Position numbers and translations under genes: made by a program. From Vitrella brassicaformis CCMP3155 (lineage: Eukaryota > Protista > Chromerida): DNA of 64,000 bases. The notes beneath the pieces were generated by a model. The model was not told where the DNA came from. It worked only from the letters and a program-made list of their open reading frames with translations, and did no database searches. Of this stretch, positions 2,051-58,605 are shown one piece after another (positions within the stretch are counted from its first letter, which is position 1; every line of letters starts with the position of its first letter). The DNA lies in NCBI GenBank assembly GCA_001179505.1, contig CDMY01000305.1, positions 372,001 to 436,000 of the forward strand, in the 5' to 3' direction.

Positions 2051-2699
2051 GCTGGATGGAACCAATCGTGTGTTCTGCATGATCACGTGTGTGTTAAACT
2101 TTGTCGTGTTCGTGGATGATGCGCGACCCGATGTTGGCTGCGAAGAGCCTGTATGCAGTGCGTGTGTCATAATCGCGTCTGTCACTGTCCTCTCGGTCTT
2201 TCCGGTGCGACTCGACGGCGAGATTTCGCGGAAATGTTCGGCGAGATTTTTCGCGCGATGAGACACCGCCGATTTACGAATTTTGATTTGAAGTCACAGT
2301 TCCATTTCCGTCCGCGTTTGCCTTTTCAGCCTTCCTTTCAGCCACAGATCCTTCATTTCTTTTTCTTTTCGCCTGGTTGTTGGCTTACGCAACACGCCTC
2401 ATCCCCTCCCATGCCTCCCAGCTCGTCCGGATGCCCTGCGTGTCTTCCTCCACCGCCGTGCCCCGGGCAAGGCGACAGTAGGTGGCGCCTCGCCTTCTGC
2501 CAAGCGACTGCTCCCTGGTGTCTGCAGAGGGCCTGCACCCAATGTGTGGATGCTCACGTGTCTTCTTTCGTCATGCCTTTCTCAGAAGGTTGGCACAAAG
2601 TGCCTCACTAGTCTGGTCTTCACTGCACACTTCAATGTCTTCGTTGGCTGCTGTTCCCCTACTGTTCAGACACGCGACCCCTTAGGAGCCACAGGAAGG

Positions 2700-4060
2700 A
2701 GATGGCACGACGAGGAAGAAGAAGAACACGAGGTGGAGGGAGAGGAGGCGCCAGCCCCCGCCGCAGCAGCGGCTGCTGGCCGTCCTCGCCACAAAGCCGC
2801 TCACAAGCCCTCAGGTCAGACAGAACAGAATCATATGTGTGTGCATCTACTGAGTGACACCCATGTGTCCATTTGTACGTGTATGTGTTGGTTTTTCAGC
2901 TGCTGCTGATAGGACATGCATAATGCGGCTTACATAATGCAGCTTACCGCCAAAGCCGCCATTGGGTGAGACAGATCCTCAGCCACACACACAAGGTGAC
3001 AAGGTGACAAGTGTCGTGTTTGGGTGCAGGGACCAACGACCCTCACCGGCCCAATCGACCCCTCCTGCTCTTCCAGAGCCCTTTCAGGAGGCCCCTGAGG
3101 CAGCAGCAGCAGCAGCAGTGCGGCACTTCTCGTGCCGCCGTCTCCTGGTGATGCAATCCTCCCTCCCGCAGTGTCCCTCGAGCTGGAACGCAAGCGCGAG
3201 GAGGAGGACAAGTCCTCGTCGCCCAAGAGGTCCAGGTTCGGACCGCCCCGTTCCCCGGCAGCTGCTGCTGAGATAGGAGAGGAGGTAAATATGGCCCCCG
3301 CACCAGCACCCGAGCAGCAGGAGCCGGAGCAGCAGCAGCAGCAGCAGCAGCCGTTCGCGCCACCCGACGTCGCCATGGCCGCGGCGGCCGAGGCAGAAGA
3401 GCCGCAGTTGCCGCCCCCCGCACCGATGACGGCCCCACCTGCCGTGGGTGTTCACGAGGCCGCTGCTGCTGCGGTCGTTGCCCCAGCCCCGGCCGCAGCA
3501 GCGGCCGCTGCTGCTGCTGGTCGCCTTCGCCGCACAGCCGCAATGCGGCTAACGGCCAAAGCCGCCATTGGTAATTCATGAGGGGCAGCAAGATGTCATT
3601 TACATATGCTATGGTCCTGCTGTGACACAGAAAGTGGCGTTGCGTACAGAGACAGTGACTCCGAGGAGTTTAACATCCGAGAACGAAATTTCAGGGGTGA
3701 AAGAGAGTTCTGTCTGCTCCATGAATATGCGGGTGTCTTAATCATGTAGCTGCTGCTCACTTCAAGGAGGAGGCGGCCGGATGTCGTCGCGTCAAGAAGC
3801 CCGTCAGCAAGTCCAAGAGTCGCCCTCGCCGCAAAGCCGCGCAGAAGCCGGTACCTGCAAAGAGGCACGCGATTTATCCATGGATGAATGAGTCTTCTTT
3901 GTTCTTCTTTGCTTGCTGTGGGGGCGCCGTCAGGAATCGCTAGCTACATTTTGTATTTGCAAGTGCCTTCATTTTTTCATCCGCAACTTCAAGGAAAGTG
4001 TCCCGGCTACTGTACCGGCCGCTCGGTCCCGAAGACAGACCGCGCAGAAGAAGAAAGGTG
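2700..4060 (+). pseudogene. Fragmented copies of the RCC1 gene 3' low-complexity region
   Basis: 3120-3540 aligns to 45230-45600 (SLELERKREEEDKSSSPKRSRFG vs SLQLKRKREEEDKSPSPKKPRFG). 2720-2890 aligns to 46270-46460 including the intron. 3770-3850 aligns to 46490-46550 and 4025-4060 to 46740-46780. Early stops; no coherent full CDS. Confidence 0.7.
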
Positions 4061-4240
4061 AGGAAAGACATGCAAAGGCACCACGCCAATTGGTGAATGC
4101 ATGTGAAGAGCAGCCGTGCGTCGTGTTAAAGTCACAGAAGCTGCTTCCGTTGTCAAGCCACCAGCAGCAGCAAGAACGCGACCGAAGCCTCTGTGATGCA
4201 CTGTGATCTGCTCTGCCACTCATGTGTCGTGTGTGGATGC

Positions 4241-4665
4241 AGTCCAAGGAGAGGAGGCGGAGGCTCTCGCGGCGCTACCGACGGGCCGTCATAGCCGTCA
4301 TACTGGTGTCTCTCCCCGCCATTGTTGGCTACTTCGGCGGGCCATTGATTCAGCACTATCTCGGTGAGGGGTTTTGCAAGGGCTGGAAAGCTGTTGTGTG
4401 CCTGTTCGTTCGTCCTCTGCTCGCCTTTGGAACCGGCTGTGCGACCATCGTCCTTGCCGTTATTGACCACCACGTCTGCCCCATGTGGTGTGACGCCGCA
4501 TGGGGCTGGTGCTGCTGCTGCTGCTGCCGCTGGCAGTGGATGGGTTCGTGGTGCCAGTGGCTGGTGCTGCTGCTGCCCCGGGCGTCGGTGGTGACGGGCA
4601 TGGCGGGGTTGCTGACGCGGCCTAGAGGGCCTGTGGCGACTGTCCTGGACACAAGATGTCATTGA
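4241..4665 (+). other. Exon-like fragment encoding two hydrophobic helices after a basic stretch
   Basis: Follows acceptor gtggatgcag. Reads KERRRRLSRRYRRAVIAVILVSLPAIVGYFGG...VVCLFVRPLLAFGTGCATIVLAVI. No clear start or family. Confidence 0.3.
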
Positions 4666-5236
4666 TTTACATCGAAACCCCAAGGGTGAGAAAGGACAGA
4701 CACACATACATGGTTGGCTTCTGCACGGATATGTGTGTGTGTGTGTGTGTGTGTGTATTCATTGTTCATTCAGCTTGGCTTCATTCACTTGGGCTCCTCG
4801 TGTGTTGTGATTGTTTGTCATGAGCGGTGGGTGATTGTCTATGTTGGGTGTGGGGTTGATGTAGATTCACTCGTGAGGCCTCTTCACATTGATAAATTCT
4901 TTCCTCTGTTGTTTGCTTTCGAACACGCAGATGCCATTCGAATTTGTCTGAAGGACGCGCAGAGGTCGCACCTGTATGCAGCCCCCCCGCTCGTCACCCT
5001 CGCCCTCCCGCCCGACTGCTGACGCCGCCCGCTGAGGAGGACAGCGGGTGGACCTACCACCTCTACCGAATCCCTGAGGAGGCTGAGGCGGCCATCAACA
5101 CTGTCCCTGATGCCTGGAAGCTGGCGGAGTGGGACAGGGTGGCGAGGGAGGCCGCTGCTGTCAAGGCGAAGAGAGAGACGGTAAAAGGGGTCACTGTTTC
5201 AGCAAAGACACGACGGAATCACCATGAAATCTTGTC

Positions 5237-6604
5237 ATGAATTCTTGCCTTGTATTGCGGCCACCCGCACCACCCGACGTCGAAATGGCCGAGGCGGAGG
5301 GAGAGGCCGCAGAGCCCCTCGCACCACAACCGCAACCCACAGCCCCTACGACGGCCCCGCCTGCCGTGGCCGTTCACGAACCCACTGCAGCTGCTGCTGT
5401 TGCCCCGCCAGCGGGTGACGAGGAGATGGCCGCACCTTCGCCACCATCACGGCCCCCCGCTGCTCAAGATGAGGATAAGGACCAAGAAATGGCGCCTGCA
5501 CCCCCTCGAGACGAGGAGCACCCGCCCCCCCCATTGGCCCCTCCTGGCCCTCCTCCCCTTCTTGAGCTATCCTTGGAGGTTCCCGAGGCTCCCGAAGCAC
5601 CGCCAGCCGCCGAGCAGGCCGAGCAGGAGGCTGCTGGGCCGGGAGAGGAGGGGGCTGAGGGGGGGATGGGGGAGGCCGCTGCTGCTACTGGCCGCCCTCG
5701 CCGCAAAGCTGCGCAGAAGCGATCAGGTCAGAAACAACTTACACACATGAACGCATCCCCTCACTCGTTGAATGACACCAGCATGTCCGTCTGTATGTGT
5801 CTGTCTTGACCATTCAGCTGCTGCTGGTGTTCATGAAGGTGAGGAGGTCATTGGATGGATGAACGGATGGAGGGATGCGTATCGGTGCATGTGTGTGTCT
5901 GAGCGTGGCTGTCATTTCAGACAAGGCGAAGGGCAAACCGACGGGGAACGGCAAGGCCAAGTGTGGTGGTGGAAAGGCGCGTGCTGCTTCGAAGCACTCT
6001 TCGTATGAGGAGATGATCAAGGAGGCCATCGGCACACTCAAGGACCGGTCAGGCAGCAGCTTGTTTGCCATCAAGAAGTTCATCCAGGCCAACTACTCCC
6101 TCGACTTCGAGGACGGACGCACCAAGGGCCACCTCAGCCGCTCACTCAAGAAGATGGCCGAAGCCAAGAAACTCATCAAGCTAAGAACTTACACACACAT
6201 TCACCGTATCCACAGGGGAAGGGTAGGTGACAATGGTGTGGTGGGATGGTGTGGTGGGTGCATCTCGACGTGTGGCGTGTGTTGGTGTGTTGTGTGTTGT
6301 GTGCAGATCAAGGCACCGTTGTCGGCCAAGAAATCCAAGGCCGCCCCCGCCCACATACACACCCGGCATGGCCAGCAGGCAGGGCGCCAACCACACGCCC
6401 ATCAACAGGGACATCGTCACCGACACAACACAGCCACAGCCACCTGCACCGGCCGCTGCTGCAGCAGCTGCCATTCCGGCCACGTCAGCACCATCCGGAC
6501 AGCCACGGCTGCAGCCCTCGCCATCCTCTGAGGAGGACCCGGCGGCTGTCGACACACTCACTCCGTCACTTAAGCAGCAAAAGCTCTCGACGCACAAAGG
6601 GTGA
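5237..6604 (+). CDS. Linker histone H1/H5 globular (winged-helix) domain protein with RCC1-tail-derived Pro/Ala/Glu N-terminus; 3' end possibly disrupted
   Basis: Exon 5921-6180 encodes KHSSYEEMIKEAIGTLKDRSGSSLFAIKKFIQANY...LSRSLKKMAEAKKLIK, close to the H15 consensus (HPxYxEMIxEAIxxLKERxGSSxxAIKKYIxxNY). Exons 5237-5727 and 5818-5838 splice to it in frame (phase 1). Confidence 0.75.
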
Positions 6605-6870
6605 GCGTTCGTACACACGACAGGGAGAGACACGCACACACCTCTTCATCGTGTGTGTATGTGTGTAAGTGTGTGTGTGTGTCTCTGTCGTCTGCTGGAT
6701 GCCTTGATGCAGTCTTGGTGGCGTTCAGTCCCCCGAAGCGCCCGAAGCCTCCCGTGTGTCGTCTGAGGAGGACCCAGCGGCCGTCGACACACTCGGACAG
6801 GGAGAGAAACAGATCTCGAAGCGCAAAGGGTGCGCGTCCATACACACGACAGGGAGAGACACGCAGACAT
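6527..6870 (+). repeat. Duplicated ~110-bp exon-end/intron-start module
   Basis: ctgaggaggaccc(g/a)gcggc(t/c)gtcgacacactc...gcaaagggtg...tacacacgacagggagagacacgca occurs at about 6527-6640 and 6762-6870. Confidence 0.75.
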
Positions 6871-7277
6871 TGCGTTCCCTTCAGGGCTGCGGGAGGCCAT
6901 GAAGGAGTACTACTCAGACGGGGGAGCAGATGTTGGTGGTGGTGAGATGGCCGGGGAGGATTGCAAACTGCAATCGCTTCCTACATTTTATATCTTCCGG
7001 CTGTGAAATTATCGTCATGCTCTTTTGCATCACTGTGCTTTCCAATCCACTTCGCACAGAAGAAAGGGCGAAATGGAATGTACGCATATGTGGCGCCTGG
7101 TGCGCATACCACACATGAGTGGATGTAGATTCCGTGAGAGGCCCCTCCTGACTGACCCATCGGCGTGTGCGGGAAGTTCGGATGCGTTCAATCTCTCACA
7201 AGAAAAACAAAAGCTCGCAAGGTTGGGATCGCGAGAAGCCGCCTGGGGCAAAAGATCCCGTGATGCCCTAGATAGCG

Positions 7278-10200
7278 ATGGATAAAGCTGACGAGGAGCC
7301 AAGTATGGATAAGGCTAAGGCGCCAACCGAAGAGGACGCCCAGAAGGGCGAAGCGGAGGCCCCTCACGCTATCCACGAGAAAGAGAGGGAGATTGCTGAC
7401 GTAGCTGCTGCCGACGGATCAATGGTGTGTCAACCAAACCACGCATTAAACAAGTCAACGCCTCATGTGCATGATTTCTATGTGTGTCCAGGCCGCTGAT
7501 CTTCTGGTGAGTCCTGACAAGGCTCCTGCCGAGTCGGCATCAGCATCAGCTGCCGTAGAGCATCCCTCATCGCTCCTCGTGGAGCCACCGGCGGACTCGC
7601 ACTCTCCCCTGCACCGACCCAATACCATGGACGCCCCCTCCCCATCGCCTCTGCCACAGCTCACGCCTTCACCAGCACCACACGAAACCCATGAGCCGTC
7701 GTCGAGCATCGCATCGCCCAACATTCCAGAGGTGACGCGGTCGATTATGACCAGCGAGCGGGCCGATAGAAGGCTGGAGGGAGAGGGCGGTATGGGTGTG
7801 GGTATGGGTATGGGTGTGGGTATGGACGTGGGTGATGGTGTTGTTGGTGGAGCCGATAGTCCTGCGATAAGGCATAGTGGCGGTGTGGCGTGGGAGGTTG
7901 GCGGGAGAGGCAGGGGCAGGATGCCGCACCTCTCGTCGATGGACCGGGAAGAACGGTGAGGCGACAGACACACAGGCACATACTCATGGAGGGAAGGCAT
8001 GCTGCTGTTCCTTCACTGCTGTCTGTTATCTGTGTGGGCAGCAAGCGTCCGGAGCCCGTAGAGGATCTGCCCAACCCTCACCCCCTCCCCCCGCCCTCCA
8101 TCCTCTTCCCTCCACACCCCTCCTACCTTACATCGCCCTCGTCGCCCTTCGACATATCGCAGTCACGTGAAGAGTCCAGGCGCCTGCTCGACTCAGCCAA
8201 CAGCTTCTTGGACTCGTCGGCGCGACAGAGGGAGCGGGGCTTCCCCCTGGGATCGATATCGCCCCCGGCATGGCAGGTGGAGGAGGGCCGGCGCGACGAG
8301 GGCGGCGGTGTGGTCGACATGGGACCCCCCACGCTGCGTGACGAGGGCGAGTGTCGGTCGCCGTCGATCGACGCTGACGAGGAGGCGAGGCTCATGCAGA
8401 TGGACTTCCGTGCGAGCCCCGGGCCTGCGCGGCAGGAGGAAGCTGCGCCGGGCATGGTGGAGCAGATGCCTGGCCCCCCTGCTGCTGTAGGTGTCGGTGT
8501 AGGTGTGCCAGTGCCATATGCGGATGGTGGTGTGCCGCAGCTGGGTGGCGGGGAGGCGACTGCTCGTGTGGAGGGGGAGGGAGAGGGAGAGGGGGAGGAG
8601 GGGCCCAGAGCCACAGAGCTGCCGGCACCTGGTGAGAAAGAAACGCAGCAGGTGATTCTGTCTGTCACGTCTGTCTGTGACGTGTGTGTGCATGTCATGT
8701 CATGTCAGTGTCTGTGGGCGGCGTGTCGAGTGAGGGCGGCCCCGGCCCCTCTCTGCAGGACTGGCAGCGACTCAACTCACGACTTAGAGCCAACGGATTC
8801 AAAGTAAGCTCTGACAAACACACGGACTCACACTGCACCAAAAAGAGAAGACTGCTCCCTGCGTGTTGTGTGCTCAGAGCATCCCATTGCTCGCGCCGCC
8901 CCCCACGCCCCAGCTGGGCCTGTCACCATCGCCATCGCCGGCCGTGTCGTTCTCGTCGCCCGAGCGCGGCAACGGCCACTCGAGGGAGGAGGGGGTTTCG
9001 GTGGACGTGACGGCCATGCTGTGGATCTGGTTCGACGTCATGCAGGAGCTCGAGAGAAGGTAAGATGCGGACAGATGCGGACAGGCAGGCAGGCAACACG
9101 AGCCCACACAAAGGCATGTGCTGAATGGTGTGTGGTGTGGTGTTTGTGTGGTAGGGGTCGTGTGATCCATGACTTGGCGACGTCCGGTGGCCCCCGCCGC
9201 GGCGACGCGGCGTCGCTGGCCATGCTACAGAAGGAAAAACACAGGCTGGAACAACAGGTACCATCCATTGGTCAGGCAGGCAGGCGCCTGCACGTGTGTG
9301 GTTGTGGTTGTGGTTGGTGTGTCAGGTGCGTCAGCTGCAGGCGGCCTTGTCGTCGAGCGCCAGTAGTGCGTCGAACCCCCTGGCGCTCGAGCAGAGGGCA
9401 AGACAGGCAGAGGCGAGGCTCAAGGTGACCATCTATCCATCCACCCATCCATCCACCATACACAACACACGACACAGATGTGTGTGTGTGTTTGTTGTTA
9501 GGTGTTGGAGAAGGAGGCGAGCGACTTGCGTCTCAAATATGCGGCAGCCGACCACCAGTCCAAGAGCAAAGAGAAGGACCTCGACAGGGTAACAAAGACA
9601 CATACAGTCACATAACATGCGACACCAACCCGGGTCTGGCGCCCCCATCTCTCCCTCTCTGCATCTGTGTCAGCTTCGTGCTTGTCTGGACAAGTTGGCA
9701 GAGGCGGACGAGCGGCGGAAGGAGCGGTGCAAGCAGACCCTGCAGCGGCTCAAGGGCAAGAAGGTCACCAGTGCCAACGACGGGGCCGCGATTGACATCA
9801 TCAACTACTTTGAGAAAAAGGCACGCGGGCGGCGGCAGGCATCGAATCGGGGGAGAGACGCCTGCCTCATACCTCTTTGTGTCTGTGTCTGTGTGGTGCA
9901 GGTGGAGATACTAGAGGAGGAGAACCAGCTGCAGCAGAGGCAGATACGCAATCTTAGCGAGTGAGTAACCACTCTTCCTTCAAGCGCGTATTTCGCTGCT
10001 CCCCTCTATCGGTTCCATGTGTGTGTGTGTGGTTGCTTGTTTCGTTTAACGTTCGTGCAGCCAATACCTGGGTGTGTCGGAGCAGCTGCGCCGCCGGCAG
10101 GCTCTCGAGCAGCACTTCCCCCAGCAGCAGACACAGACCCAAGCACAGACACAGACACGGCTCCTCAAAGACCAGCCACAGCCGCAGCCACAGCCACCCA

Positions 10201-23499: not shown

Positions 23500-25269
23500 T
23501 CAGTTTTTCTACAGTATACCAACCACAGCACAAACAGCCAAACACATATATGTGGGCATCCTTCCTGGCCGCCATCTTGAAAACACGTACCGGATTGTGG
23601 TATTGGATTTTCTGATGATCGAGACAATCTTGTAGACCCTTTGCGTGAGGTTGTCGACATTCTCCGTGAGGTTGTCGATTGCCCTGTCCCTGTCCATGGC
23701 GTCCCTCTGCTAATGTGCTGTGTTGTGTCCTTTGACTGTGTCGCTGTCTGCCTGTCTGCCTGTCTGCCTGTCTGTCTGTCTGTCTCTGTGTATGCCTACC
23801 TGAAGTACAAGTCCAACTCCCTCTCGGTGATGTCGTTGTGTGTGGGCGAATGGCTGTGAGAGTGGCGCGAATATCCTGCTTCACGCCGGCCTCGTCCAAC
23901 ACAGGAACAAACGGCATCTGTCAACCCTGCAGAAGTGCATCAATCACATATCGTGTCGCACAGGAGTGTTCTCTCCCCGCCCAACACGGCTCTCTGTGAG
24001 TGAGTTGGTGAATCTCTGCTGTACGCGTCCCTGGGCATCCTGTGGCCAGAAGAGGCCGTTGCTCGGCGCTCCGAAGATCCCCATCATACCCTCGAGGGCC
24101 GCTGCGTCCGACCCGTCTTCGTACACGTTGCACGCCTGGTCGACCCATTGTACAAACGGATACAGCCCCGCCCGCAGCTCCATCAGGGCCTGGATGTATG
24201 CTTGCACATCGCCCTTGGGGCCGTACGGCCTCTCCCTCAGCCTCATTTCTGTGGGGCGGGTGGCGGTTGGGTACTGACCGACAGACAGGGGCAACACACA
24301 CACGGAAAGACAGAGAGGCACATAAAATATATATGTCTCTATCTGTCTGTCTGCCTGTCTGCAGCGGGCTGGATGGGCTGGGTAAAAGAGAGTGCACGTA
24401 CATACCATGTTGTGGTCGACTGCGTCGTCGGGTGGGACCTGGTCGTCCTTGGCGCACCCCAGGTCGATCACGTGCAGATGGCCCTGGGCATCCCGCGTGA
24501 GGTTCTGCTTCTTGACGTCATTGTGAGTAACTGAAATGAGAAAAGAGGAAGAGAGAGAGAGTCATGTGTGTAGAGCCAGAGGCATACGTCCGTGCGTTCA
24601 TCTCTGTATGTGTCTTTCTGGCTGACCTCCATCCTGGTGCATGGCTTGAAACCCCTGCAGGCCCTGTCGCGCGATGTCGCGACACTCGGCCAGTGGCGGT
24701 CCCATCGCGAGATTGGCCGTGTGGATGGCCAGGTCCTCCCCACAGTCAGGGAGCACGAGGTAGCCGTGCTCGTCGTCGACCTCGAAGTAGTACGTCAGGG
24801 GCGTCACGACATGCGGGCTGGCCATGGTGTTGGGCCGGGTGAGATACATGTGCTCATCTATGTACACCAAACGAAGGATCCGAGAGAAAGATCTTGGCGC
24901 GCATGCACTTACTGTCCAGCGCCGCTGCAGGACCCTCACCCTCAGCCTGAAAATGCATTGCAGGCACGCAGAGAGGAATTCAGAATTATAATCGCCGAGC
25001 TGCAGTGCGTCCCTTCTTGATGTATGCACGTTGGCCTCTCCATCCATGTATCGGGCGGACTGACGCGTCCAGGTCGGGCGCCCCCCTTCGCTCCTCGCCT
25101 GCTCGATGAGTCTGTCGCGCGCCTCTTCCATCTGAAAGCACATGCGATTGCTGCAGACGTGCAGGAGGTTAAGTCTGAAGCTGATACTTACTACTTTGAC
25201 TTTCTGCTTCAGACTGCATGACACCCTATACAATGCATGCTTGGCGCGCTTCTCGCACTGCATCCATCT

Positions 25270-25300
<31 letters not shown>

Positions 25301-26580
25301 AAAAAGTATGAGGTATGTCTGCTCGGGGCCGATGGAGAGGCTGCCTCCCGCCCATCTGCAGCTGCTGCTCCTCCATCTCCTCCATCTTTCGCTCGGCATC
25401 CCTCAAGCGACTCTCGTACTCAGACGTGTCGTCATCATGCTTTTGCTGATATTGGAACCACAGGACACAACGCCAATGAAGGATGTGTCTCTGCCCCACC
25501 TTTAGTTCTTGGTATTTGTCTTCCTGCTCGGTGAGTCTGTTCTGCCAGTCCTTTTCGCCGCCGTCGGACGCGTCCTGTATTGCAGTCTTGGCGCCTGTGT
25601 GTGAGTGCCTGCACCTGGCGCCCGCTGTCTTTGAGCATCTGCGCCTTGACCTGCACTGCTATGTCCTTGCCTTTCACCTTAGACTCGACCGTCTTCAATC
25701 TCCCACGCATCTCACGTGCCTACAAGAAAGAGAGGTCCGCCTGCGTTGCGGTGGTGGCCCTGCGGCCGCTGTTTCAGTCACCTCCTGCTGCAGAGTAGTG
25801 ATTTCTTGTTGGAGCTCTTCTCCAAGGGAGGTTTGGTGGCGTAGGTGGCTTTCGGTCTCATCGGCCTGATGGTTTATGGATGACACACGCACAATAGATG
25901 CCACAACAGGATGGTGTGTATGATCATGGTCACCCACACACACAGAGAAACACAGACACACAGACATATATACGCAGAGAGAGAGGCTGACCTGTTTTCG
26001 GAGGTTGCCTTTGGCCTTTCTAATGTCATGTAGCTTCTCTTGAAGCCCACGGACGTCTTCACCATGTTTTTGCTGACGAGACCACACACACAGAAACTTC
26101 CCCCGCAAGCATCTCGCACCATACCTGCAGCTCCTCATAACGCATCATTTGGTTGTTGAGCTCCTGGGCGTACGGCAACCACACAAGATGGTAAGGAAAC
26201 GGACTGATGCCGGGCAGTGGCCTGCCCCTCCCTTTTTTGCTTGCCTCCTGCAAACGCTCCGCACGAGATCTTGGCGTGTGTGCACTTACTGTCCAGCGCC
26301 GCTGCAGGACCCTCACCCTCTGCCTGAAAGTGCATTGCAGGCACACCCAAGTAGGACAATTGGTGAGCTGAAGTGCATGAAGTGCGTATGTACCTTCTTG
26401 ATGTATACACGTTGGCCTCTCCATCCATGTATCGGGCGGGCTGACGCGTCCAGGTCGGGGGCCCCCCTTCGCCCCTCGCCTCCTGCTCGATGAGTCTGTC
26501 GCGCGCCTGACAATCTGAAAGCACATGCGATTGCTGCAGACGTGGCGTTGGTGCCTGGAGTGCCTCCTGCCGGCTGCACG
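23500..26580 (-). CDS. Divergent Ser/Thr protein kinase with coiled-coil segments and duplicated N-lobe exons; possibly a pseudogene
   Basis: GEGRRG and GQRVYIKK (about 26480-26400), ALDNEHMYL, YLVLPDCGEDL, MHQDGVTHNDVKKQN (HxDxKxxN, exon from 24530), HVIDLG, TRPTE..PYGPKGDV. 24900-25160 duplicates 26280-26545. Confidence 0.65.
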
Positions 26581-40965: not shown

Positions 40966-43900
40966 ATGGCATCGCTCGGCACCACAACAGAGGCTGCAGC
41001 TGCAGCCGCAGCAGCTGGGGGAGAGCCTGCAGCACAGCCTGCAGCAGCAGCTGCAGCAGCGGCTGCCGCTGCACCATCGCAGGCACCTCCTCCCGGGTTC
41101 GGCGCGGCGGGCCTCGTTCGTGAGGATGAGTGGCGGTGCGACGGTTGCAGGACCCCGAACAAAGAGACGGATCTCAAGTGTGTGGCATGCGACGACGTCA
41201 AGCCGGGGCTGGACCAGGAGGAGGTTGATGCCGCCGTCCGCAAGCAGCAGGAGGACCTCAAACGACGCTTCCTCGGCTTAGGCAGCGGCGCTGGTGGAGG
41301 TGGAGGTGGGGGAGAGGGGGGTCTCCCCGCTCGGCCGCCGGGAGCAGTCTTCCACCCTGCCCCTGTGGTAGGTCAGCAGCCGTCTGTTCAAGTGCCGCCT
41401 CCCACAGGCGCGGCGCTCTTCGGGTGGCGGCCTCCAACCGCCGCTGCCGCCGGCGGTGGTGGTGGTGGGGGTGGTATTGCGTTGTTCGGCCGTGGTGCTG
41501 GGGAGGCAGAGTTCCGCCTGAGGTCCAACGAGAAGACGCCCAGGTACGGGAGGGAAGCCACAACACGACCCCCACCGATTCGTAGCGTGTGTGCATATCT
41601 CTTCCCTCCCTCGGTGTCTGTCTGATGCATTTGTCTGTGCAGTTTCGGTCCACCAGAGGAGCCCGCAGCAGCAGCAGCAGCTGCCGCGGCCGCGGCCCCT
41701 CCCCCCCAAGTAGAGAGCAACGATGCCGCCAACCCTCCCCTCTTTGTGTTTGGCGCTAACCAGAACCAGCCGCCTCCGCCCCCCTCCCTCGACCCAATGC
41801 CCGGCGAGCTCTTCGCAGATCAGCTCCAGCAGCAGCCTGCCGCTGCAGCAGCACCAGCAGGGTGGGTGCCGGTGTTGGCCCCCGCCCCGGGCGCCCCTGT
41901 TGTTGGTCTGAAGAGCGGTTTGCGTGTGCCTGATTTGAGCGTGGGGGTGTTGGATTTGGGTGTTGAGGAGCAGCGGATTGTCAATGGGGTAGCGGTGCCG
42001 CTGGGAGAAGTATTCTCGCATGGATCTGGTATGTATGGGGGGATTGGGATGCAACTGAGCGCACACACGAATGGATGGATGGATGGACGGATGGATGGAT
42101 GGATCTCTGTGTTGGTGGTGTGTGTGTCGTGTGTTGCAGGTGAGTGTGATCAGCTGGGTTTGGGGGACACTAAGCTGCAGAGGAAGAAACCTGACCTAAT
42201 CAAAGTACGTTTCAGCCACACCACACCCATACCACACAAACACACGTGTGTTGATATCTGATGCTTGTATTGGCCTCTGTGTGCGTGTGTGTGTGTGTGT
42301 GTGTTTAGGAGTTGGAGGGCGAGGAGGTGTGGGAGATAGCAGTGGGCGGCATGCACTCAGCAGCGCTCACCAAGAACGGAAAAGTCTGGACCTGGGGTGA
42401 GCTGAGCTGTCACACAGACATCCACGCCCTCGCACACCGCCCCAGGCACACACGCATGACATGACATGTGTGTGTGTGTGTGTGTGTGTCCATTGGTTTG
42501 TTCAGGGTGCAACGACGACTACGCACTCGGCCGTGACGGAGTGCAAAACCGACCCGGTGTGCTCGAGCTGGACATCACTATCAAGATCAAGAAGGTAACC
42601 CCACACACGCACCACACCACACCACACCACACCAGCACAGCCATCCCTCCCTCCCTCCCTCTGTCCCTCTGTTCCTCTGTCCCTCTGTTGATCGTCCCAT
42701 CACCCGACCAGGTGGTGTGCGGCGACAGCCACAGCGCCGGCCTCTCCTTCACCAGACACGTCTACCTATGGGGCTCCTACAAGGTAGGTGCCTACCACAC
42801 CCACCCCACACAGACTCACAAACGCCCCCGCATCCCTCTCTCCTCTCTCCTCTCTCCCTGTGTGTGTCCTGTTGTCATGTGTCGTGTGTCAGTGCAACGA
42901 CTTCCACATCGGGTTCCCCCATCGGGAGGTCAAGGTCACGGGCCTCCCTGAGGGCGCGTCGGCCACCAGGGTGCGGCAGTTCTTCGAGAGCAAGCTGCCG
43001 GACGTCGCAGTGCAGGAGGTCCGCCTCGACAGAGACAGTGGGTACGCTCGTCGGCACCATGCCCTGCACACACAACACAGGGAGAGACAGAGAGAGAGGC
43101 TCTGTTTTGCGTGTTGTTGTGAGTGATGTGTTTGTGTTCAGGAGTGCGCGTGTGTCCTTTGTGGACGAAAGCGCTGTGGAGAAGGCCGCCGGCCTCGACA
43201 ACGAAGTCGTCACGGAGGACACATTCCTCGACTCCACCACACAAGAGGACCAAAAGGTGACCATCCCCCCCGCCCCACCCACACCGACACCGACTCACAC
43301 ATCTGCCTTCCCATCTCTCTCTGTCTCTCTCTGTGTGCGTGTGTGTGGGGAAGGAGTGTCGCATCCGCGTGTCGTCATGTCTGTGTGAGAAGCAGCGCGT
43401 GCCCGTGAGAGTTCCCCATCTCGACAACATCCAGCAGCTCGCAGCCGGCAACAACCACACCATCGCCCTCCGGGGCGACTCAGAGGTGAGTGACCCTCTA
43501 TCTGCCCATCCACCCACCTCGCACCCTCCCCTCCCCCCCGTCTCTCTCTCTCTCTCTCTCTGTGTGTCTCTTTGAGTATGCAGTTGTATGTGTGGGGCAA
43601 CAACGAGTTTTCTCAGCTGACCTTCCCCCCTCTCCGGCCCGCAGACGACGAGGAGGCCCGCAGTGACGGATTCCAGAAGCGCAAGCGCACCGCAGCGCGG
43701 GAGCTCCTGTACCCCAAGAAGCGCACACTCGCCGAGTAAGAGAGAGAGAGACGCGGGGGAGAGAGAGATGGATAGATGTCATTTGTCTGTGTGTCTGTCT
43801 GTCTGTCTGTGTGTCTGTCTGTGTGTGCAGGCTGGGCATTGGTGCGTCGTGTGGGTCGATCAGCCGAGTCTTCGCCTCGGCCAACTGCACCTTCCTCGGT

Positions 43901-44968: not shown

Positions 44969-47615
44969 TGGCTCCATTACCCATCCATCAGGCCGACGGC
45001 GGTGCGCAACACTCTGTCGAGTTGGTAAGACACACACTGCACAAACACAACAGCACTTGCCCCTCATCTGATTCCACTTGTCTCTCTGTCTGTCTGTCTG
45101 TGTGCTCCACCCCGCCCCCACCACATACGGCACACAGGCGTGGACCGGCAAGACCGACTTCCTCCGCGGCGAAGCGCCAGAGGCGGTGGTGGCCCCTGCA
45201 GCGGCAGCGGCAGCAGCAGCTGCTGCAGCTGCACCTGTCGTGCCGCCGTCTCCCCCTCCCGCAGTGTCACTCCAGCTCAAACGCAAGCGCGAGGAGGAGG
45301 ACAAGTCGCCGTCGCCCAAGAAGCCCCGGTTCGGCCACCTGACGGCAGCTGCTGCCGAGATGGAGGAGGAGATGGACATGGCCCCCGCACCACAGCCCCT
45401 GCCCCCTCCAGCCATACCCGAGCAGCAGGAGCAGCAGCAGCAACAGCCCCCCGCACCATCCGATGTCGACATGGCCGAGGCCGAGGCAGAGGAGCCGCAG
45501 TTGCCGCCCTTCGCACCGATGACGGCTCCGCCTGCCGTGGGTGTTCACGAGGCTGCTGCGGCTGCTGCTGTTGCCCCGCCAGGGGGCGACGAGGAGATGG
45601 CCGCACCTTCGCCACAACCACCGCCCCCCGCTGCTCAAGATGAAGACGAGGACCAAGAGATGGCGCCTGCGGCCCCTCCAGAGGAGGAGCACCCACTACC
45701 CCCACGGGCCCCTCCTGGCCCTCCTCCTGTTCCTGAGCCATCCCAGGAGGCTCCGGAGGCTCCCCAAGCACCGCCAGCCGCCGAGGAGGCCGAGCAGGAG
45801 GCTGCTGGGGCGGGAGAGGAGGGGGCTGAGGGCGGCGGGGAGCAGCTCGAGCAGCCTGCTGGGGGCGTTGAGGGTGCGGAGGGCGGAGAGGAGGAGGCTC
45901 CAGCTCCCGCGGTGCCCAAGGCCAAAGGAAAGGCCAAGGGGCGCGCCAAGGGCAAGGCCAAGGCGGGGCGCGCTAAAGCCAAGCGCGCCCCGCGCAAGAC
46001 CAGGGCTGCTGCAGCTGACGACGATCACGAGGAGGAACAGGAAGAGGGGCAGGCTGCAGCAGCGGCAGCAGCAGCAGCAGCTGGTGGTGGGATGGGGGAG
46101 GCCGCTGGTGCGGCAGTTGGAGAGGGGGATGTAGAAATGGCCGAAGGAGTTGGAGGAGAGGGCGAGGGCGCTGCGGGCGAGGGCGAGGGTGCGGCAGCTG
46201 CCGTGGCTGGCGAGCAGCAGCCTGAGGAGCCACAGGAAGAACACGAGGACGAGGAGGAAGAAAAAGACAAACCAGAGGAGACGGAAGAGGAGGCTCCCGC
46301 CCCAGCCGCAGCAGCGGCCGCTGCTGCTGGTGGTCGCCCTCGCCGTAAAGCCGCGCAGAAGCCCTCAGGTCAGAAACAACTTACACACATGAACGCATCC
46401 ACCCACTCGTTGAATGACACCCCCCGTATGTCCGTCTGTGTGTGTCTGTGTGGATTGTTCAGCTGCTGCTGGTGTTGGTGAAGGGGAGGAGGAGGAGGAG
46501 GCAGCCGGCGGGCGTCGCGTCAAGAAGCCCGTCGGCAAGACCAAGGCCAAGAGCAAGGCGGCGAGCAAGGCTAAGGCGAAGGCCAAGAGCGGCAGTAGTG
46601 CTGCGGTGGCCGCGCGGCCGAAGCGGACGGGGGCGAGGAGGCAGCCGCCACCTGACGAGGAGGCAGAGGACGAGCGCGAGCATGACGAACAAGCAGAGAA
46701 CGAGGAGGCGCCGCCCGCCCCGCCTGCGCGTCCGCAGAGGCCCCGCAGACAGGCCGCACAGAAGCAGCAGAAAGGTGCGCCGAAAGAGAGGAGAGGCAGC
46801 GTGTGGGTGGTCTTGTTCTGTGTTCCATGGATGGACTCTTTGTGCTGTGCTGTGCTGTGTTGCAGACGTAGCCGAGGAGGAGAAGGAGGAGGAGAAGGAG
46901 GAGGGCGAGGCCGAGCCAGTGGCGGCGGCTGCTGCTGCTGCGGCCGCCAAGCCCCCACCAGCACCGAAGAGGGCCGCCAGAGCGAAACCGAAACCCAAAG
47001 CACAGACAGAAGGTCAGTCAGTGAAAGAGTGCGACATCCGCCCAACCACTCATTGATTCTCTCTGGTTGCATCTGCTCAGCCAAGGCCAAGCCGAGGCCT
47101 CGTAGGGCTGCCGCGGCCGCTGCACACCACGACCAACACGAAGAGGAGGATGAAGACGAGGACGAGGGCAAGGAGGAGGGTGGAGAGGAGGAGGTCGCGC
47201 AGCCTGCCGCTGCTGCTAAGGCCAAGGCCAAAGCTAAGGGCAAGAGTGCGGCTGCCAAGAAGGCCGCTGCCAAGGCCAAGGCCAATGGGAAAGCACCAAA
47301 GCCTGCAGAGGAGGAGGAGGTACGCGAGAGGGAGAGAGATGTAGCTCACCCACATCAACCGGTCGGTGGAGGGACGGTCGTCATTTGTGTGTGTGTGTGT
47401 GTGTGTGTGTCAGGAGGATGAGGGTGAGGACGAGCCCGTGGCGGCCCAGCCCAAGGCTAAGGCGAAGGCGAAGGCCAAAGGTGCGTGGGGATGAACAGAC
47501 ATGGGACCATTCATTGGGTCGATGGATGGACAGATGGAGGGATGTGTGGGTGTCATTCATGTCAGGCAAGGCGAAGGGCAAAGCGAAGGCCAAGGCTAAG
47601 GCCAAGGCCAAGTGA
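40966..47615 (+). CDS. RCC1: RCC1 (Ran guanine nucleotide exchange factor) orthologue with N-terminal RanBP2-type zinc finger, internal RRM and acidic/Lys-Ala C-terminal tail
   Basis: Blades GEVFSHGSGECDQLGLGD..RKKP, VGGMHSAAL..VWTWGCNDDYALGR, CGDSHSAGL..VYLWGSYK, AAGNNHT, CGGSFHT, GDVFSWGVGVNHQLG, DGGAQHS match RCC1 proper. ZnF WRCDGCRTPNKETDLKCVAC at 41131-41190. TGA at 47613-47615. Confidence 0.88.
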
Positions 47616-56249: not shown

Positions 56250-56779
56250 AGTCTCCAGAATGGTCCACCGTGGCTTGCTATGAGCGATGCGTTGGGGAGA
56301 TACAGATGGCGGCGGAAGGGGGATGAAATGGCCGAGATCTCTTCCACTATCGGTTAAGTGAATAAGCAGATGTGCAGCCATGCTTTTGAGCATCGTTTCC
56401 CTCCCACAGAGTGCGAGCTGCGAATGCGATCCTCTCAGCTACCCCACCCCTGGAGGCGTTGAGAGGCTTTGCAGCACTCTGGCTGAGTGTTGTGGTGCGC
56501 TGCAGCTCAAGAAACAGGAGATCTTAAGATGGCGATGAATCTGCGACAATGTGTCTTGTCGATGATGGTGGCGGGGGTGCTTATCCATTCATTGGTTGCC
56601 GTTCCCCCTGCCCTCTGCTGAAACACACCCGCGCCACGGCCACTGCTGCACGGGAGATCAGCAGCTTCGCCCTCTCTTCAGGCCAACACAAGACAGCCTT
56701 GGGTCAGTCGGCTACCTGCCGGCCTTCATGAAGGCCGACAACAGCAGCCGACGACAAGGGATCGGAGTGGTGCACCAGA

Positions 56780-57286
56780 ATGGCGAACAAGCATGAAGGC
56801 GATGCTCAAGCGTGCGTTCATCTCCTGTGCGGCTTTCCACTCATCGCCCTCATCTTCCTGACGCCAGCCATGCCGGCACTGGCCGACACGCCGGAGGCCC
56901 CGCCGCCCTCGCCAGCCGCCGTGCAGCAGCTCTCCTTGCCTTCTCTGATGGTGCAGGAGCAGCCTGTCCGTCTGGATGTGGGCGGCCAGCCCTTCGCCGT
57001 CGCCAAATCAACTCTTGCTAAGCATCCCGACACTGTGCTTGGGCAGCTGGCCAGTCAACTGGGGACGAGCAAAAGAGATCAGCCGGTGTTCATCGACGCT
57101 GATCCGGCGTACTTCCCTTACGTCGTGGATTACTACCGATTCGGCGCGCCCATCTATGTGGACCGATCGGTGGACATTCGCAAGCTGGTGCGCGAGCTGA
57201 GTCGGTTCGGCATTGCGATTGACGAGGTGCAAGACATTCAGCTGCCAAAGGAAGAGGCCCTCGAAGCGCTGGCTTACCGAGTGGCC
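56780..57286 (+). CDS. KCTD/T1-type BTB/POZ protein, copy 1 (runs into gap)
   Basis: VRLDVGGQPFAVAKSTLAKHPDTVLGQL..VFIDADPAYFPYVVDYYRFG. Confidence 0.8.
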
Positions 57287-57586
57287 NNNNNNNNNNNNNN
57301 NNNNNNNNNNNNNNNNNNNNNNNNNNNNNNNNNNNNNNNNNNNNNNNNNNNNNNNNNNNNNNNNNNNNNNNNNNNNNNNNNNNNNNNNNNNNNNNNNNNN
57401 NNNNNNNNNNNNNNNNNNNNNNNNNNNNNNNNNNNNNNNNNNNNNNNNNNNNNNNNNNNNNNNNNNNNNNNNNNNNNNNNNNNNNNNNNNNNNNNNNNNN
57501 NNNNNNNNNNNNNNNNNNNNNNNNNNNNNNNNNNNNNNNNNNNNNNNNNNNNNNNNNNNNNNNNNNNNNNNNNNNNNNNNNNNNNN
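57287..57586. other. Assembly gap (300 N) between BTB duplicates
   Basis: N run. Confidence 1.
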
Positions 57587-57771
57587 CTGCCCTCTGCTGG
57601 AACACACCCGCGCCACGGCCACTGCTGCACGGGAGATCAGCAGCTTCGCCCTCTCTTCAGGCCAACACAAGACAGCCTTGGGTCAGTCGGCTACCTGCCG
57701 GCCTTCATGAAGGCCGACAACAGCAGCCGACGACAAGGGATCAGAGTGGTGCACCAGAATGGCGAACAAGC

Positions 57772-58605
57772 ATGGAGGCGATACTCAAGCATGCGTTCAT
57801 CTCCTGTGCGGCTCTTCCACTCATCGCCCTCATCTCCCTGACGCCAGCCATGCCGGCGCTGGCCGACACGCCGGAGGCCCCGCCGCCCTCGCCAGCCGCC
57901 GTGCAGCCGCTGACCATGCCCGCCCTGTTCGAGCAACAGCGGCCTGTGCGTCTGAATGTGGGCGGGCAGACCTTCTGGGTCGCCAGATCGACACTTGCCA
58001 AGTACCCCGACACTGTGCTTGGAGAGCTGGCCAATCAGCAGCTGGACACAGGCAGCGGCACTCTCGCTCGACTGGTTAATCCGTTTTTCATCGACGCTGA
58101 TCCGGCGTACTTCGCTTACGTCGTGGATTACTACCGATTCGGCGCGCCCATCTATGTGGACCGATCGGTGGACATTCGCAAGCTGGTGCGCGAGCTGAGT
58201 CGGTTCGGCATTGCGATTGACGAGGTGCAAGACATTCAGCTGCCAAAGGAAGAGGCCCTCGAAGCGCTGGCTTACCGAGTGGCCCTGGAGATGCTCGGCA
58301 AGCAGCGTTGAAGTGCATTTGTAAGGGGTGGGACGTTTTCTGCTCCGACTTTCGACTACGACAAGCTGATCTCGAGTATCGGGGGCTCTCTACCGGGTGC
58401 GGGTGCCTACGTCGATTCCATCAAGGGCAACAATCCTCCAGAGGCCGACCGGTTTAGGCTGATGATACAGGAGCAGGCTGGGAAGGTACTGCGGAGTCGT
58501 GTAGTCAATGTGAAGGAACTTCAATGGGATGAGAAGGCACAGACCTACCTGATCAAATGGGATTATTTACCAATCTACCCTCAGTGGTCTATTACAGTCA
58601 AGTAG
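57772..58605 (+). pseudogene. KCTD/T1-type BTB/POZ protein, copy 2, with in-frame TGA at 58309-58311 followed by 97 open codons
   Basis: VRLNVGGQTFWVARSTLAKYPDTVLGEL..FFIDADPAYFAYVVDYYRFG. The same frame resumes after TGA (SAFVRGG...WSITVK) to TAG 58603-58605. Confidence 0.6.

What the first reader, a model, noticed from the sequence alone, without database searches (positions are those of the whole stretch)
5237..6180. Linker histone H1 globular domain fused to an RCC1-derived tail through a newly formed chimeric intron
Seen: a clear H15 winged-helix sequence at 5992-6180. Its upstream exon and intron (5270-5838) are paralogous to RCC1 45460-46475. RCC1 exonic gaaggggaggagg reads gaag|gtgaggagg here, which creates a donor. 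The rest of this intron (tcattgg..gatggatgaacggatggagggatg) and the next exon start (acaaggcgaagggcaaaccga) match the last RCC1 intron and exon (gcaaggcgaagggcaaagcga). The frame is kept throughout. Established: described alveolate linker histones (ciliate macronuclear H1, apicomplexan H1-like proteins) generally lack the globular domain. Inference: a young chimeric gene joining an H1 globular domain to an RCC1 tail, implying a globular-domain H1 source in this lineage.
Basis: partly seen in the sequence, partly recalled or inferred. Interest (0 to 1): 0.78.

Follow-up and report, generated by a model that had tools for sequence, protein, structure and literature searches.

The report
Chimeric RCC1-tail/H1 gene, partly decayed
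In the alga Vitrella brassicaformis, a copy of the 3' end of an RCC1 gene has been fused at the DNA level onto one of several linker-histone (H1) gene copies, creating a new intron; the histone part of this copy has since lost pieces that working H1 proteins keep, so it is a neat example of gene shuffling but probably not a working linker histone.

Summary
Window 5921-6180 encodes a linker-histone globular domain (PF00538, E 2.6e-19). The 5258-5942 stretch upstream is an 87-89% identical, internally deleted copy of the C-terminal tail of the RCC1-repeat gene at about 41-47.6 kb. The intron 5839-5920 really is stitched from an RCC1 exon (with a G-to-T change that makes a GT donor) and the 3' part of RCC1's last intron. 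The public Vitrella brassicaformis gene model (345 aa, "H15 domain-containing protein") uses exactly these splice sites.

- The RCC1 piece is an N-terminal leader, not a tail.
- Vitrella has at least three more H15 loci, so the histone source is native.
- Pfam linker-histone domains are already reported from dinoflagellates.
- This copy alone has lost the ancestral donor after the H15 exon (GT to CT), 13 codons with the conserved "SYKL" wing strand, the next donor, and any lysine-rich tail.
- AlphaFold gives three helices and no wing; a paralog run as control keeps its wing.
- dN/dS is about 1.
- No RNA data could be laid, so splicing is untested.

Best reading: a real DNA-level chimera, most likely a decaying or repurposed paralog. 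Moderate-to-low interest.

The parts
5237..5726 (+). Annotated exon 1: an acidic, Pro/Ala-rich leader ending in an AT-hook-like GRPRRKAAQK. From about 5258 it is a copy of RCC1 tail exon A (45446-46368) with two in-frame internal deletions.
   Evidence: Self-BLAST at 87-88%. Pairwise alignment. A 19-nt island, 5663-5681 = 46089-46107, shows the deletions happened in this copy. Part of the exact reconstruction of P0001. No Pfam family.
5727..5817 (+). Intron 1, inherited whole from RCC1 (46369-46462). Donor and acceptor are conserved.
   Evidence: 80 of 90 aligned bases identical. Alignment.
5818..5838 (+). 21-nt mini-exon (AAAGVHE): the first 21 nt of RCC1 tail exon B (46463-46483).
5839..5920 (+). 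Chimeric intron. Positions 5839-5847 are former RCC1 exon B sequence, with G-to-T at 5840 creating the GT donor. Positions 5848-5920 are the 3' part of RCC1's last intron (from 47511). RCC1 46493-47510 (about 1 kb, including several exons) is missing.
   Evidence: 67/75 identical; score 86 against shuffles 13.5 +/- 4.5.
5921..5942 (+). First ~22 nt of the H15 exon, derived from RCC1's last exon (47566-47587). The RCC1/H1 recombination point follows, inside Lys/Ala/Gly-coding microhomology.
   Evidence: Homology to the H1 paralogs starts at 5943. Alignment A1..
5943..6180 (+). H1-derived part of the exon: a KAKxGGGKARAA leader plus the three helices of the linker-histone globular domain (PF00538 about 5995-6180).
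   Evidence: PF00538 E 2.6e-19. 90-92% nt identity to the paralogs L001, L002, L003. AF2 gives three helices at pLDDT 74-85. Foldseek top hits are H1.0/H5 globular domains.
6181..6182 (+). Ancestral splice donor destroyed: CT here, GT in all three paralog loci.
   Evidence: Alignment A2. An exact DNA contig covers 6076-6274 in run X4, and no variant letter is reported at 6181 in X1 or X2.
6181..6222 (+). 42 nt of former intron that the public model reads as coding (LRTYTHIHRIHRGR), up to a cryptic in-frame donor AGG|GTAGGT at 6222/6223.
6223..6306 (+). Annotated intron 3. The acceptor at 6305-6306 is shared with the paralogs.
6307..6531 (+). Annotated last exon. Only IKAP..AKKSKAAPA is H1-derived. 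A 39-nt in-frame deletion removes SYKLNMNVVGAAK, the conserved wing strand. The paralogs' next donor (GAGG|GTACGC) is lost at about 6350, so the frame runs about 60 codons through former intron to a stop. There is no Lys-rich tail.
   Evidence: Alignment A2. L003 exon structure. The Pfam match stops at profile position 62 of 74, against 69 of 74 in P0003. AF2: no hairpin, pLDDT 45-55, against a hairpin in the control.
45138..47615 (+). Parent sequence: the C-terminal tail exons of the RCC1-repeat gene, from exon A (45138-46368) and exon B (from 46463) to the last intron (47481-47565) and last exon (47566-47615, including the stop).
   Evidence: In-frame GT-AG continuity with the last RCC1 blade exon (ends 45024) was read. 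RCC1 repeats by Pfam.
2680..4060 (+). A second, degenerate copy of the RCC1 tail, with stop codons and rearrangement, upstream of the chimera.
   Evidence: Self-BLAST at 78-90%. Reading of the translations.

Best explanation
The locus is a DNA-level chimera produced by segmental duplication and illegitimate recombination in Vitrella brassicaformis.

How it formed. A copy of the 3' end of the nearby RCC1 gene was joined to a copy of a native H1 gene. The join lies inside the Lys/Ala/Gly-coding start of the H15 exon, at about 5943. The RCC1 copy then lost two in-frame blocks from its first exon. It also lost about 1 kb running from the middle of exon B to the middle of RCC1's last intron. A G-to-T change next to that junction supplies a consensus AAG|GTGAGG donor. 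The result is a 21-nt mini-exon and an 82-nt intron built from two unrelated RCC1 pieces.

What it encodes. The public 345-aa model reads an acidic, proline-rich leader, an AT-hook-like GRPRRK motif, and then the three helices of an H15 domain.

What has decayed. The H1 half is damaged in ways the paralogs are not:
- the ancestral donor after the H15 exon is CT;
- the conserved beta-strand of the wing is deleted;
- the next donor and all lysine-rich tail exons are gone.

Conclusion. I take it to be a degenerating, or at most repurposed, H1 paralog and not a working linker histone. If translated, it could bind DNA only weakly through helix 3 and the basic flanks, and could not seat on the nucleosome dyad in the canonical way.

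Shown: both parents, the junctions, the lesions and the open frame of the model. Inferred: the order of events, loss of function, and any expression.
For: Origin:
- BLAST blocks at 87-88% to the RCC1 tail, including a shared intron.
- Chimeric intron 67/75 identical to RCC1's last intron and exon, far above shuffles and above the H1 paralog introns.
- H1 homology starts at 5943.
- The island 5663-5681 = 46089-46107 places the deletions in this copy.
- P0001 is rebuilt exactly from GT-AG exons.

Native H1 family:
- P0003, P0004 and the environmental P0002 are 75-83% identical in the H15 region.
- L003 shows the intact architecture: H15 exon, wing exon, and three Lys-rich tail exons.

Decay:
- The donor is CT here and GT in all three paralogs; there is a 39-nt deletion of SYKLNMNVVGAAK; the next donor is lost.
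- The Pfam match ends at profile position 62 of 74, against 69 of 74 in P0003.
- AF2 gives three helices and no hairpin, with pLDDT 45-55 beyond residue 70. The control P0003, with the same alignment, gives a hairpin at residues 70-79 with pLDDT 83-86.
- On this copy's own branch there are 10 non-synonymous and 4 synonymous changes. Pairwise dN/dS is 0.6-1.1.
- The RCC1-derived exon is no better conserved than its intron: 0.877 against 0.889 identity.
Against: - Under the public model there is no frameshift or in-frame stop.
- The cryptic donor lies exactly 42 nt downstream and is in frame, and the wing deletion is 39 nt, also in frame. The two leader deletions are multiples of three as well (255 and 216 nt). 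This is what selection for an open frame would give. It is also what slippage in codon-periodic GCN/AAG repeats and a frame-seeking gene predictor would give.
- dN/dS between the leader and the RCC1 tail is 0.42-0.49, not 1.
- dN/dS rests on about 20 substitutions and is near 1 for the paralogs too, so it does not single out this copy.
- The three helices, including nearly all family-invariant positions, are intact.
- No RNA data were available, so expression is simply unknown.
Confidence: 0.55

Rival explanations
1. A working young chimeric chromatin protein. The locus is transcribed and spliced as annotated. It yields a protein with an acidic/AT-hook-like leader taken from RCC1 and a wing-less H15 domain, with a new chromatin role that is not classical linker-histone binding.
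For: - The open frame is intact across four GT-AG exons and equals the public model.
- All indels are in frame.
- The new donor AAG|GTGAGG and the cryptic donor AGG|GTAGGT both fit the consensus.
- The helices and family-invariant residues are kept.
- dN/dS of the leader is 0.42-0.49.
- Both parents are chromatin binders, so the fusion makes functional sense (inference).
Against: - The ancestral donor, the conserved wing strand, the next donor and the Lys-rich tail are all lost.
- About 60 C-terminal codons are former intron, and they overlap a more gene-like frame.
- dN/dS is about 1 on the H15 exon.
- The exon is no better conserved than the intron.
- There is no transcript evidence.
- No second protein of 190-604 aa carries this leader.
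Confidence: 0.28
2. An annotation-only fusion. The RCC1-tail fragment and the H15 fragment are adjacent relics of duplication that are not parts of one transcript. The ab initio predictor joined them because the frame happens to be open. Any H15 transcript would start elsewhere or belong to the downstream unit.
For: - A second RCC1-tail copy at 2680-4060 is clearly pseudogenic, yet it carries a 168-aa gene model.
- Gene models came from Augustus with RNA-seq hints, and about 22% of models had no expression support (PMC4501334).
- An unannotated, more gene-like frame (6369 to about 7005, with a repeated exon and conserved GT donors) overlaps the model's last exon.
Against: - The splice signals of all three introns are canonical.
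- Two of them are inherited from functioning RCC1 introns.
- The mini-exon can be skipped without loss of frame, since both flanking introns are in phase 1 (read).
- Nothing positive shows separate transcripts.
Confidence: 0.14
3. The reverse direction. This locus, or an H1 gene, is the parent, and RCC1 acquired its tail from it.
For: RCC1's last two exons resemble the last two exons of the intact H1 on L003. They share the same AAAG|GTGCG donor, the same phase and a 27-nt identical Lys/Ala-coding run. Some H1-tail ancestry of the RCC1 tail therefore cannot be excluded.
Against: - For the 5258-5942 segment the polarity is clear.
- This copy keeps a 19-nt island from the middle of a block that RCC1 has in full.
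- It lacks about 1 kb holding several coding exons of RCC1.
- Its GT lies within what is open coding sequence in RCC1.
- The Lys/Ala similarity is low-complexity and has many alternative alignments.
Confidence: 0.03

Closest known systems
Linker histone H1/H5 globular domain (Pfam PF00538; GH5 and H1.0 structures such as 1HST and 7XVL), especially the plant/algal type with the short wing motif GKLVKVKASYKL
   Same: Strong HMM match (69.7 bits). Three-helix core with the family-invariant L, G, S, A and the near-invariant HP..M..A..LK.R.GSS..AI.K positions. The best structural matches are H1.0/H5 globular domains, over 57-68 columns at TM 0.6-0.7 by target.
   Different: The conserved wing strand (ASYKL) is deleted, and no hairpin is predicted. 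There is no Lys-rich C-terminal domain. The N-terminus is a 170-aa acidic leader of RCC1 origin.
The other Vitrella H15 loci: P0003 (CDMY01000891), P0004 (CDMY01000200) and the environmental contig L003 (ERZ893784)
   Same: 90-92% nucleotide identity over the H15 exon. The intron position after the domain and the acceptor of the wing exon are shared.
   Different: Each has a different context. L003 has a canonical Lys-rich tail in three exons. P0003 and P0004 have an unrelated N-terminal extension and no Lys-rich tail. This copy is the outgroup of the three and alone has the CT donor and the wing deletion.
Chimeric genes born by segmental duplication and exon shuffling with de novo splice sites (the class that includes Drosophila jingwei and sphinx; from my own knowledge)
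   Same: Two identifiable parents. A junction inside coding sequence at microhomology. Exonic sequence turned into intron by a point change that makes a donor.
   Different: Expression and function are unproven here, and one parent's domain is visibly eroding.
Alveolate linker histones without a globular domain (Toxoplasma TgH1-like, PMC9769792; Tetrahymena macronuclear H1, from my own knowledge)
   Same: Same broad lineage and presumed chromatin context.
   Different: Those proteins are only Lys-rich tails. This locus is the opposite: a globular core without the tail. Pfam-detectable linker-histone domains are reported for many dinoflagellates (PMC4751559).

Membership tests
Linker histone H1/H5 (PF00538) | Sequence match to the globular-domain HMM above the curated threshold | tested here: met
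   69.7 bits for the exon and 66.7 bits for P0001, against a cut-off of 22.4. Only profile positions 1-62 of 74 are matched.
Linker histone H1/H5 (PF00538) | Complete winged-helix fold: three helices plus the C-terminal beta-hairpin wing | tested here: not met
   AF2 on the annotated product gives helices only, with pLDDT 45-55 after residue 70. The paralog control gives the hairpin. A 39-nt deletion removes the SYKL strand. This result depends on the annotated splicing.
Linker histone H1/H5 (PF00538) | Lys/Ala/Pro-rich C-terminal domain | tested here: not met
   The annotated C-terminus is former intron and is not Lys-rich. The tail exons present in L003 have no counterpart here.
Linker histone H1/H5 (PF00538) | Binding at the nucleosome dyad and linker DNA | not testable with these tools
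   Needs biochemistry or ChIP.
Chimeric (fusion) gene from segmental duplication | Two parental sequences identifiable, with defined junctions | tested here: met
   RCC1 tail and the H1 family. The junction is at about 5943.
Chimeric (fusion) gene from segmental duplication | Single open reading frame across the junction with usable splice signals | tested here: met
   Exact GT-AG reconstruction of P0001.
Chimeric (fusion) gene from segmental duplication | Fused transcript exists | tested here: inconclusive
   The only runs that hold the stretch behave like DNA. The one run guessed to be RNA has no contig on the gene. No transcript-derived protein fragment was found.
Unprocessed pseudogene | Disabling lesions (stops, frameshifts, lost splice sites) and neutral evolution | tested here: inconclusive
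   Two ancestral donors are lost and a conserved strand is deleted. dN/dS is about 1. There is no stop or frameshift under the annotated model.
RCC1 repeat protein (the parent gene at about 41-47.6 kb) | RCC1 repeats detected by HMM | tested here: met
   PF00415 at 22.7 and 22.8 bits (cut-off 21.7) and PF13540 at 24.6 bits (cut-off 22) on separate exons, plus PF25390 partial hits.

The most novel reading that the evidence does not exclude
The H15 core is a shuffled module in Vitrella. Four loci show three different architectures: a canonical Lys-rich tail; an unrelated N-terminal extension; and the RCC1 leader. In this reading the present locus is an expressed, lineage-specific chromatin protein: a wing-less H15 domain driven by an acidic/AT-hook-like leader borrowed from the chromatin-binding tail of RCC1. 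None of the three annotated CCMP3155 H15 genes carries a canonical Lys-rich tail. The family might therefore record the dismantling or repurposing of globular H1 on the branch leading to apicomplexans, which lack it.
Probability: 0.2. Interest if true: 0.6.

Novelty: new member of a known kind. Interest (0 to 1): 0.3.

Why it matters
The locus is a clean, fully traceable example of how a new intron and mini-exon arise. An exon-to-intron deletion plus one point mutation creates the GT. It also shows how a chromatin-protein tail can be grafted onto a histone domain.

It corrects two assumptions. Globular H1 is present, in several copies, in a chromerid. The public "H15 domain-containing protein" model of this locus is a chimera whose last 75 residues are probably not real H1 sequence.

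If the copy proved to be expressed, it would be a natural experiment on what an H15 core can do without its wing and tail. As it stands it mainly matters for annotation quality and as a case study. It is not a new kind of system.

Tried and rejected
1. RNA evidence.
- The look-up of sequencing runs listed no holder on record as RNA.
- Read laying was given 5,901 letters. X1 and X2 are uniform and DNA-like.
- I first read the patchy run X4 as RNA. I dropped that reading because its contig depths are a near-constant 2-4 times those of X1, and because it holds intron-containing paralog contigs.
- X5, guessed to be RNA, touches the gene only with 18-20-nt low-complexity matches.
- So nothing can be said about splicing.

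2. Word search for short, transcript-derived fragments of the H15 exon: no hit.

3. Search for other proteins carrying the RCC1-type leader in the 190-604 aa range: only the protein itself.

4. Junction 21-mer in JGI metagenomes: 0 hits. H15 in the same collection: one relative at 44% identity.

5. Naming the nearest non-Vitrella H15 relatives.
- They are 35-52% identical and come from plants, a green alga, a fungus, Tara metatranscriptomes and unnamed contigs.
- This gives no specific donor lineage and no sign of transfer. A tree on about 75 residues was not attempted.

6. ESM Atlas look-up: only generic H15 clusters.

7. Splicing of the unannotated upstream exon (ends 5180, phase 0) onto the mini-exon or the H15 exon: rejected, because both give early stops (my reading).

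8. Homology of RCC1's Lys/Ala exons with the H1 tail exons: left open, because the matches are low-complexity with many alternative alignments.

Full report
**What is there**

The window is from Vitrella brassicaformis CCMP3155. The exon at 5921-6180 is 100% identical to an NCBI/UniProt protein of that organism, P0001 (345 aa, "H15 domain-containing protein"), on the 520-kb contig CDMY01000305.

Its translation hits Pfam PF00538 (Linker_histone) at E 2.6e-19, 69.7 bits against a cut-off of 22.4, covering profile positions 1-61 of 74. The best sequence matches among solved structures are yeast Hho1p and avian H5 globular domains.

The public protein is reproduced exactly by four exons, 5237-5726, 5818-5838, 5921-6222 and 6307-6531, all flanked by GT-AG.

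**The RCC1 paralogy**

Self-comparison of the window gives three collinear blocks:
- 5260-5306 with 45446-45492, 87%.
- 5350-5661 with 45521-45832, 88%, E 1e-104.
- 5674-5847 with 46316-46492, 87%, E 7e-52.

The last block spans the end of an exon, a whole intron with its donor and acceptor, and the start of the next exon.

The partner is the C-terminal tail of a multi-exon gene on the + strand.
- Exons at 42.4-44.7 kb hit the RCC1 repeat models PF00415, PF13540 and PF25390.
- Its N-terminus has a RanBP2 zinc finger.
- The last blade exon (ends 45024) joins the first tail exon (starts 45138) in frame through GT-AG (read).
- Two earlier first-reader notes on this window also treat it as RCC1.

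**The chimeric intron**

RCC1 reads GAAGGGGAGGAGG at 46480-46492, inside an open exon. This locus reads GAAG|GTGAGGAGG at 5835-5847, so a T at 5840 creates a consensus donor.

Directly after it, from 5848, the sequence switches to RCC1's last intron at 47511 and runs through the acceptor into the first ~22 nt of RCC1's last exon.
- 67 of 75 aligned bases are identical.
- The alignment score is 86, against 13.5 +/- 4.5 (maximum 31.5) for shuffles.
- The score is 19-30 for the equivalent intron and exon start of the H1 paralogs.

About 1 kb of RCC1 (46493-47510, several exons) is therefore missing.

In the first exon, a 19-nt island (5663-5681 = 46089-46107) sits between two missing blocks of 255 and 216 nt. 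This shows the deletions occurred in this copy and are not insertions in RCC1.

**Where H1 begins**

DNA homology to the other Vitrella H15 loci starts at 5943, about 22 nt inside the exon (alignment A1). The junction lies within Lys/Ala/Gly-coding microhomology. The fusion therefore happened inside an exon. The RCC1-derived part is the N-terminal leader, not a tail.

**The H1 family**

The word search found two more annotated Vitrella H15 proteins, P0003 and P0004. It also found an ORF on an ENA metagenome contig, P0002. They are 75-83% identical to this copy in the domain. Their loci were fetched as L001, L002 and L003.

L003 shows an intact canonical gene:
- a small leader exon;
- the H15 exon, with donor ACG|GTAAGG;
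- a wing exon, IKASYKLNMNVVGAAKKAAPKKPKAAAE;
- three Lys/Ala/Pro-rich tail exons.

L001 and L002 share only the core and carry a different N-terminal extension. They have no Lys-rich tail exons and have lesions of their own: a 4-nt insertion in the wing exon of L001 and a 10-nt deletion inside the H15 exon of L002.

The source of the globular domain is therefore native and multi-copy. The copy in this window is the outgroup of the other three (identities).

**Lesions specific to this copy (alignment A2)**

1. The donor after the H15 exon is CT at 6181-6182 and GT in all three paralogs. The public model instead uses a cryptic AGG|GTAGGT donor 42 nt downstream, which adds 14 residues.
2. A 39-nt in-frame deletion removes SYKLNMNVVGAAK. 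This includes the S and K of the near-invariant "KASYKL" wing strand (alignment A4).
3. The paralogs' next donor (GAGG|GTACGC) is gone, so the annotated frame runs about 60 codons through former intron to a stop.
4. No Lys-rich tail follows.

Pfam coverage ends at profile position 62 of 74, against 69 of 74 for P0003.

AlphaFold2, with a 57-sequence alignment, predicts three helices (pLDDT 74-85) and no hairpin for this product, with pLDDT 45-55 beyond residue 70. The same alignment with P0003 as target gives the helices plus a hairpin at residues 70-73 and 76-79, with pLDDT 83-86.

The best structural matches of the model are H1.0/H5 globular domains over 57-68 columns.

**Selection**

- Over 237 nt of the H15 exon, pairwise dN/dS to the paralogs is 0.6-1.1.
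- Changes unique to this copy are 10 non-synonymous and 4 synonymous. The numbers are small, and the paralogs look similar.
- The RCC1-derived leader against its parent gives dN/dS 0.42-0.49. Exon identity (0.877) is no higher than intron identity (0.889).
- All indels are multiples of three. That may reflect selection, slippage in codon-periodic repeats, or the predictor's choice of model.

**Expression**

No run on record as RNA holds the stretch.

On laying 2600-8500, X1 and X2 are uniform and DNA-like. X4 is patchy, but its contig depths are a near-constant multiple of X1's and it holds intron-bearing paralog contigs, so I treat it as DNA. It confirms the sequence at 6076-6274, including the CT.

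X5, guessed to be RNA, has nothing on the gene and a 221-nt contig on the downstream gene.

The genome paper states that models came from Augustus with RNA-seq intron hints, and that 18,240 of 23,503 Vitrella models had expression support (PMC4501334). Splicing of this model is therefore untested.

**Comparison with what is known**

Pfam-based scans already reported putative linker histones in many dinoflagellates (PMC4751559). Toxoplasma has only a tail-like H1 (PMC9769792).

The exhaustive protein search gave 710 hits at E <= 1e-3. The nearest non-Vitrella hits are 35-52% identical and come from plants, a green alga, a fungus and marine metatranscriptomes. The domain is a generic eukaryotic H15 of the plant/algal short-wing type, with no sign of transfer.

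No other mid-sized protein carries the RCC1-type leader. The junction was not found in JGI metagenomes.

**Verdict**

The chimeric origin is secure; I put it at about 0.9.

The functional claim is not secure. The H1 half is eroded in exactly the parts that define a working linker histone, and expression is unknown. I favour a decaying or at most repurposed paralog (0.55) over a working young gene (0.28) or an annotation-only fusion (0.14).

Chimeric genes of this kind and H15 domains are both known, and the gene model is already public. It is a new member of a known kind, with modest interest.

Noticed in passing
window 2680-4060: A second, degenerate copy of the RCC1 tail. The modules are in RCC1 order, it contains stop codons, and a repeated ~35-nt insert (ATGCGGCT.ACGGCCAAAGCCGCCATTGG) occurs at about 2924 and about 3541. 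The public 168-aa gene model at 2937-3581 sits on it and is probably a pseudogene fragment.
   Followed up: partly
window 6369-7005 (+): An unannotated, gene-like frame starting MASRQGANH. It has a duplicated exon-plus-intron unit (6524-6640 and 6759-6869, 80% identical) ending in conserved KG|GTG donors, and a final exon ending about 7005. It overlaps the annotated last exon of the H1 model in another frame.
   Followed up: partly
window 4944-5240 (+): An unannotated open frame (..WTYHLYRIPEEAEAAINTVPDAWKLAEWDRVAREAAAVKAKRET..) with no Pfam hit. Its TGA overlaps the annotated ATG of the H1 model (ATGA at 5237-5240).
   Followed up: partly
window 47430-47615 versus L003 1645-1840: The last two exons of the RCC1 tail mimic the last two exons of the intact H1 on L003: the same AAAG|GTGCG donor, the same phase, an exon starting GCAAGGC, a 27-nt identical Lys/Ala-coding run and a stop soon after. 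This is either shared ancestry of the RCC1 tail with an H1 tail or convergence of low-complexity sequence.
   Followed up: partly
L001 2270-2330; L002 about 7140 and 7300-7320: The other two annotated Vitrella H15 genes carry lesions relative to the intact L003 gene. L001 has a 4-nt insertion that shifts the frame of the wing exon. L002 has a 10-nt deletion inside the H15 exon plus 5- and 24-nt deletions. Neither has Lys-rich tail exons. No annotated CCMP3155 H15 gene looks canonical.
   Followed up: partly
P0003 residues 45-100; P0004 residues 45-115: The paralogs share an N-terminal extension (..GRVYGQREWKLI.PWLKVGDKVSVLNANPLYVEA.CVEG..) with no Pfam match. It may be a small beta-rich domain.
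   Followed up: no
window 56608-57286 and 57587-58284: A 90.5% identical direct repeat of about 690 nt on either side of a 300-N gap (57287-57586). It may be an assembly duplication of two haplotypes or a real tandem repeat.
   Followed up: no
window 24889-25161 and 26266-26544: An 86% identical direct repeat of about 280 nt, 1.4 kb apart.
   Followed up: no
window 42790-43120 (+): An RRM-like frame (VKVTGLPEGASATRVRQFFESKLPDVAVQEVRLDRDSG) lies among the RCC1 blade exons. An earlier first-reader note on this window records the same thing.
   Followed up: no
run X4, loose end at window 6319: A contig continues ..ACAAGTTCAACATGAACGTGG (IKASYKFNMNV). This wing-exon variant matches none of L001-L003, so at least one more H15 copy exists in the sequenced material.
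   Followed up: no
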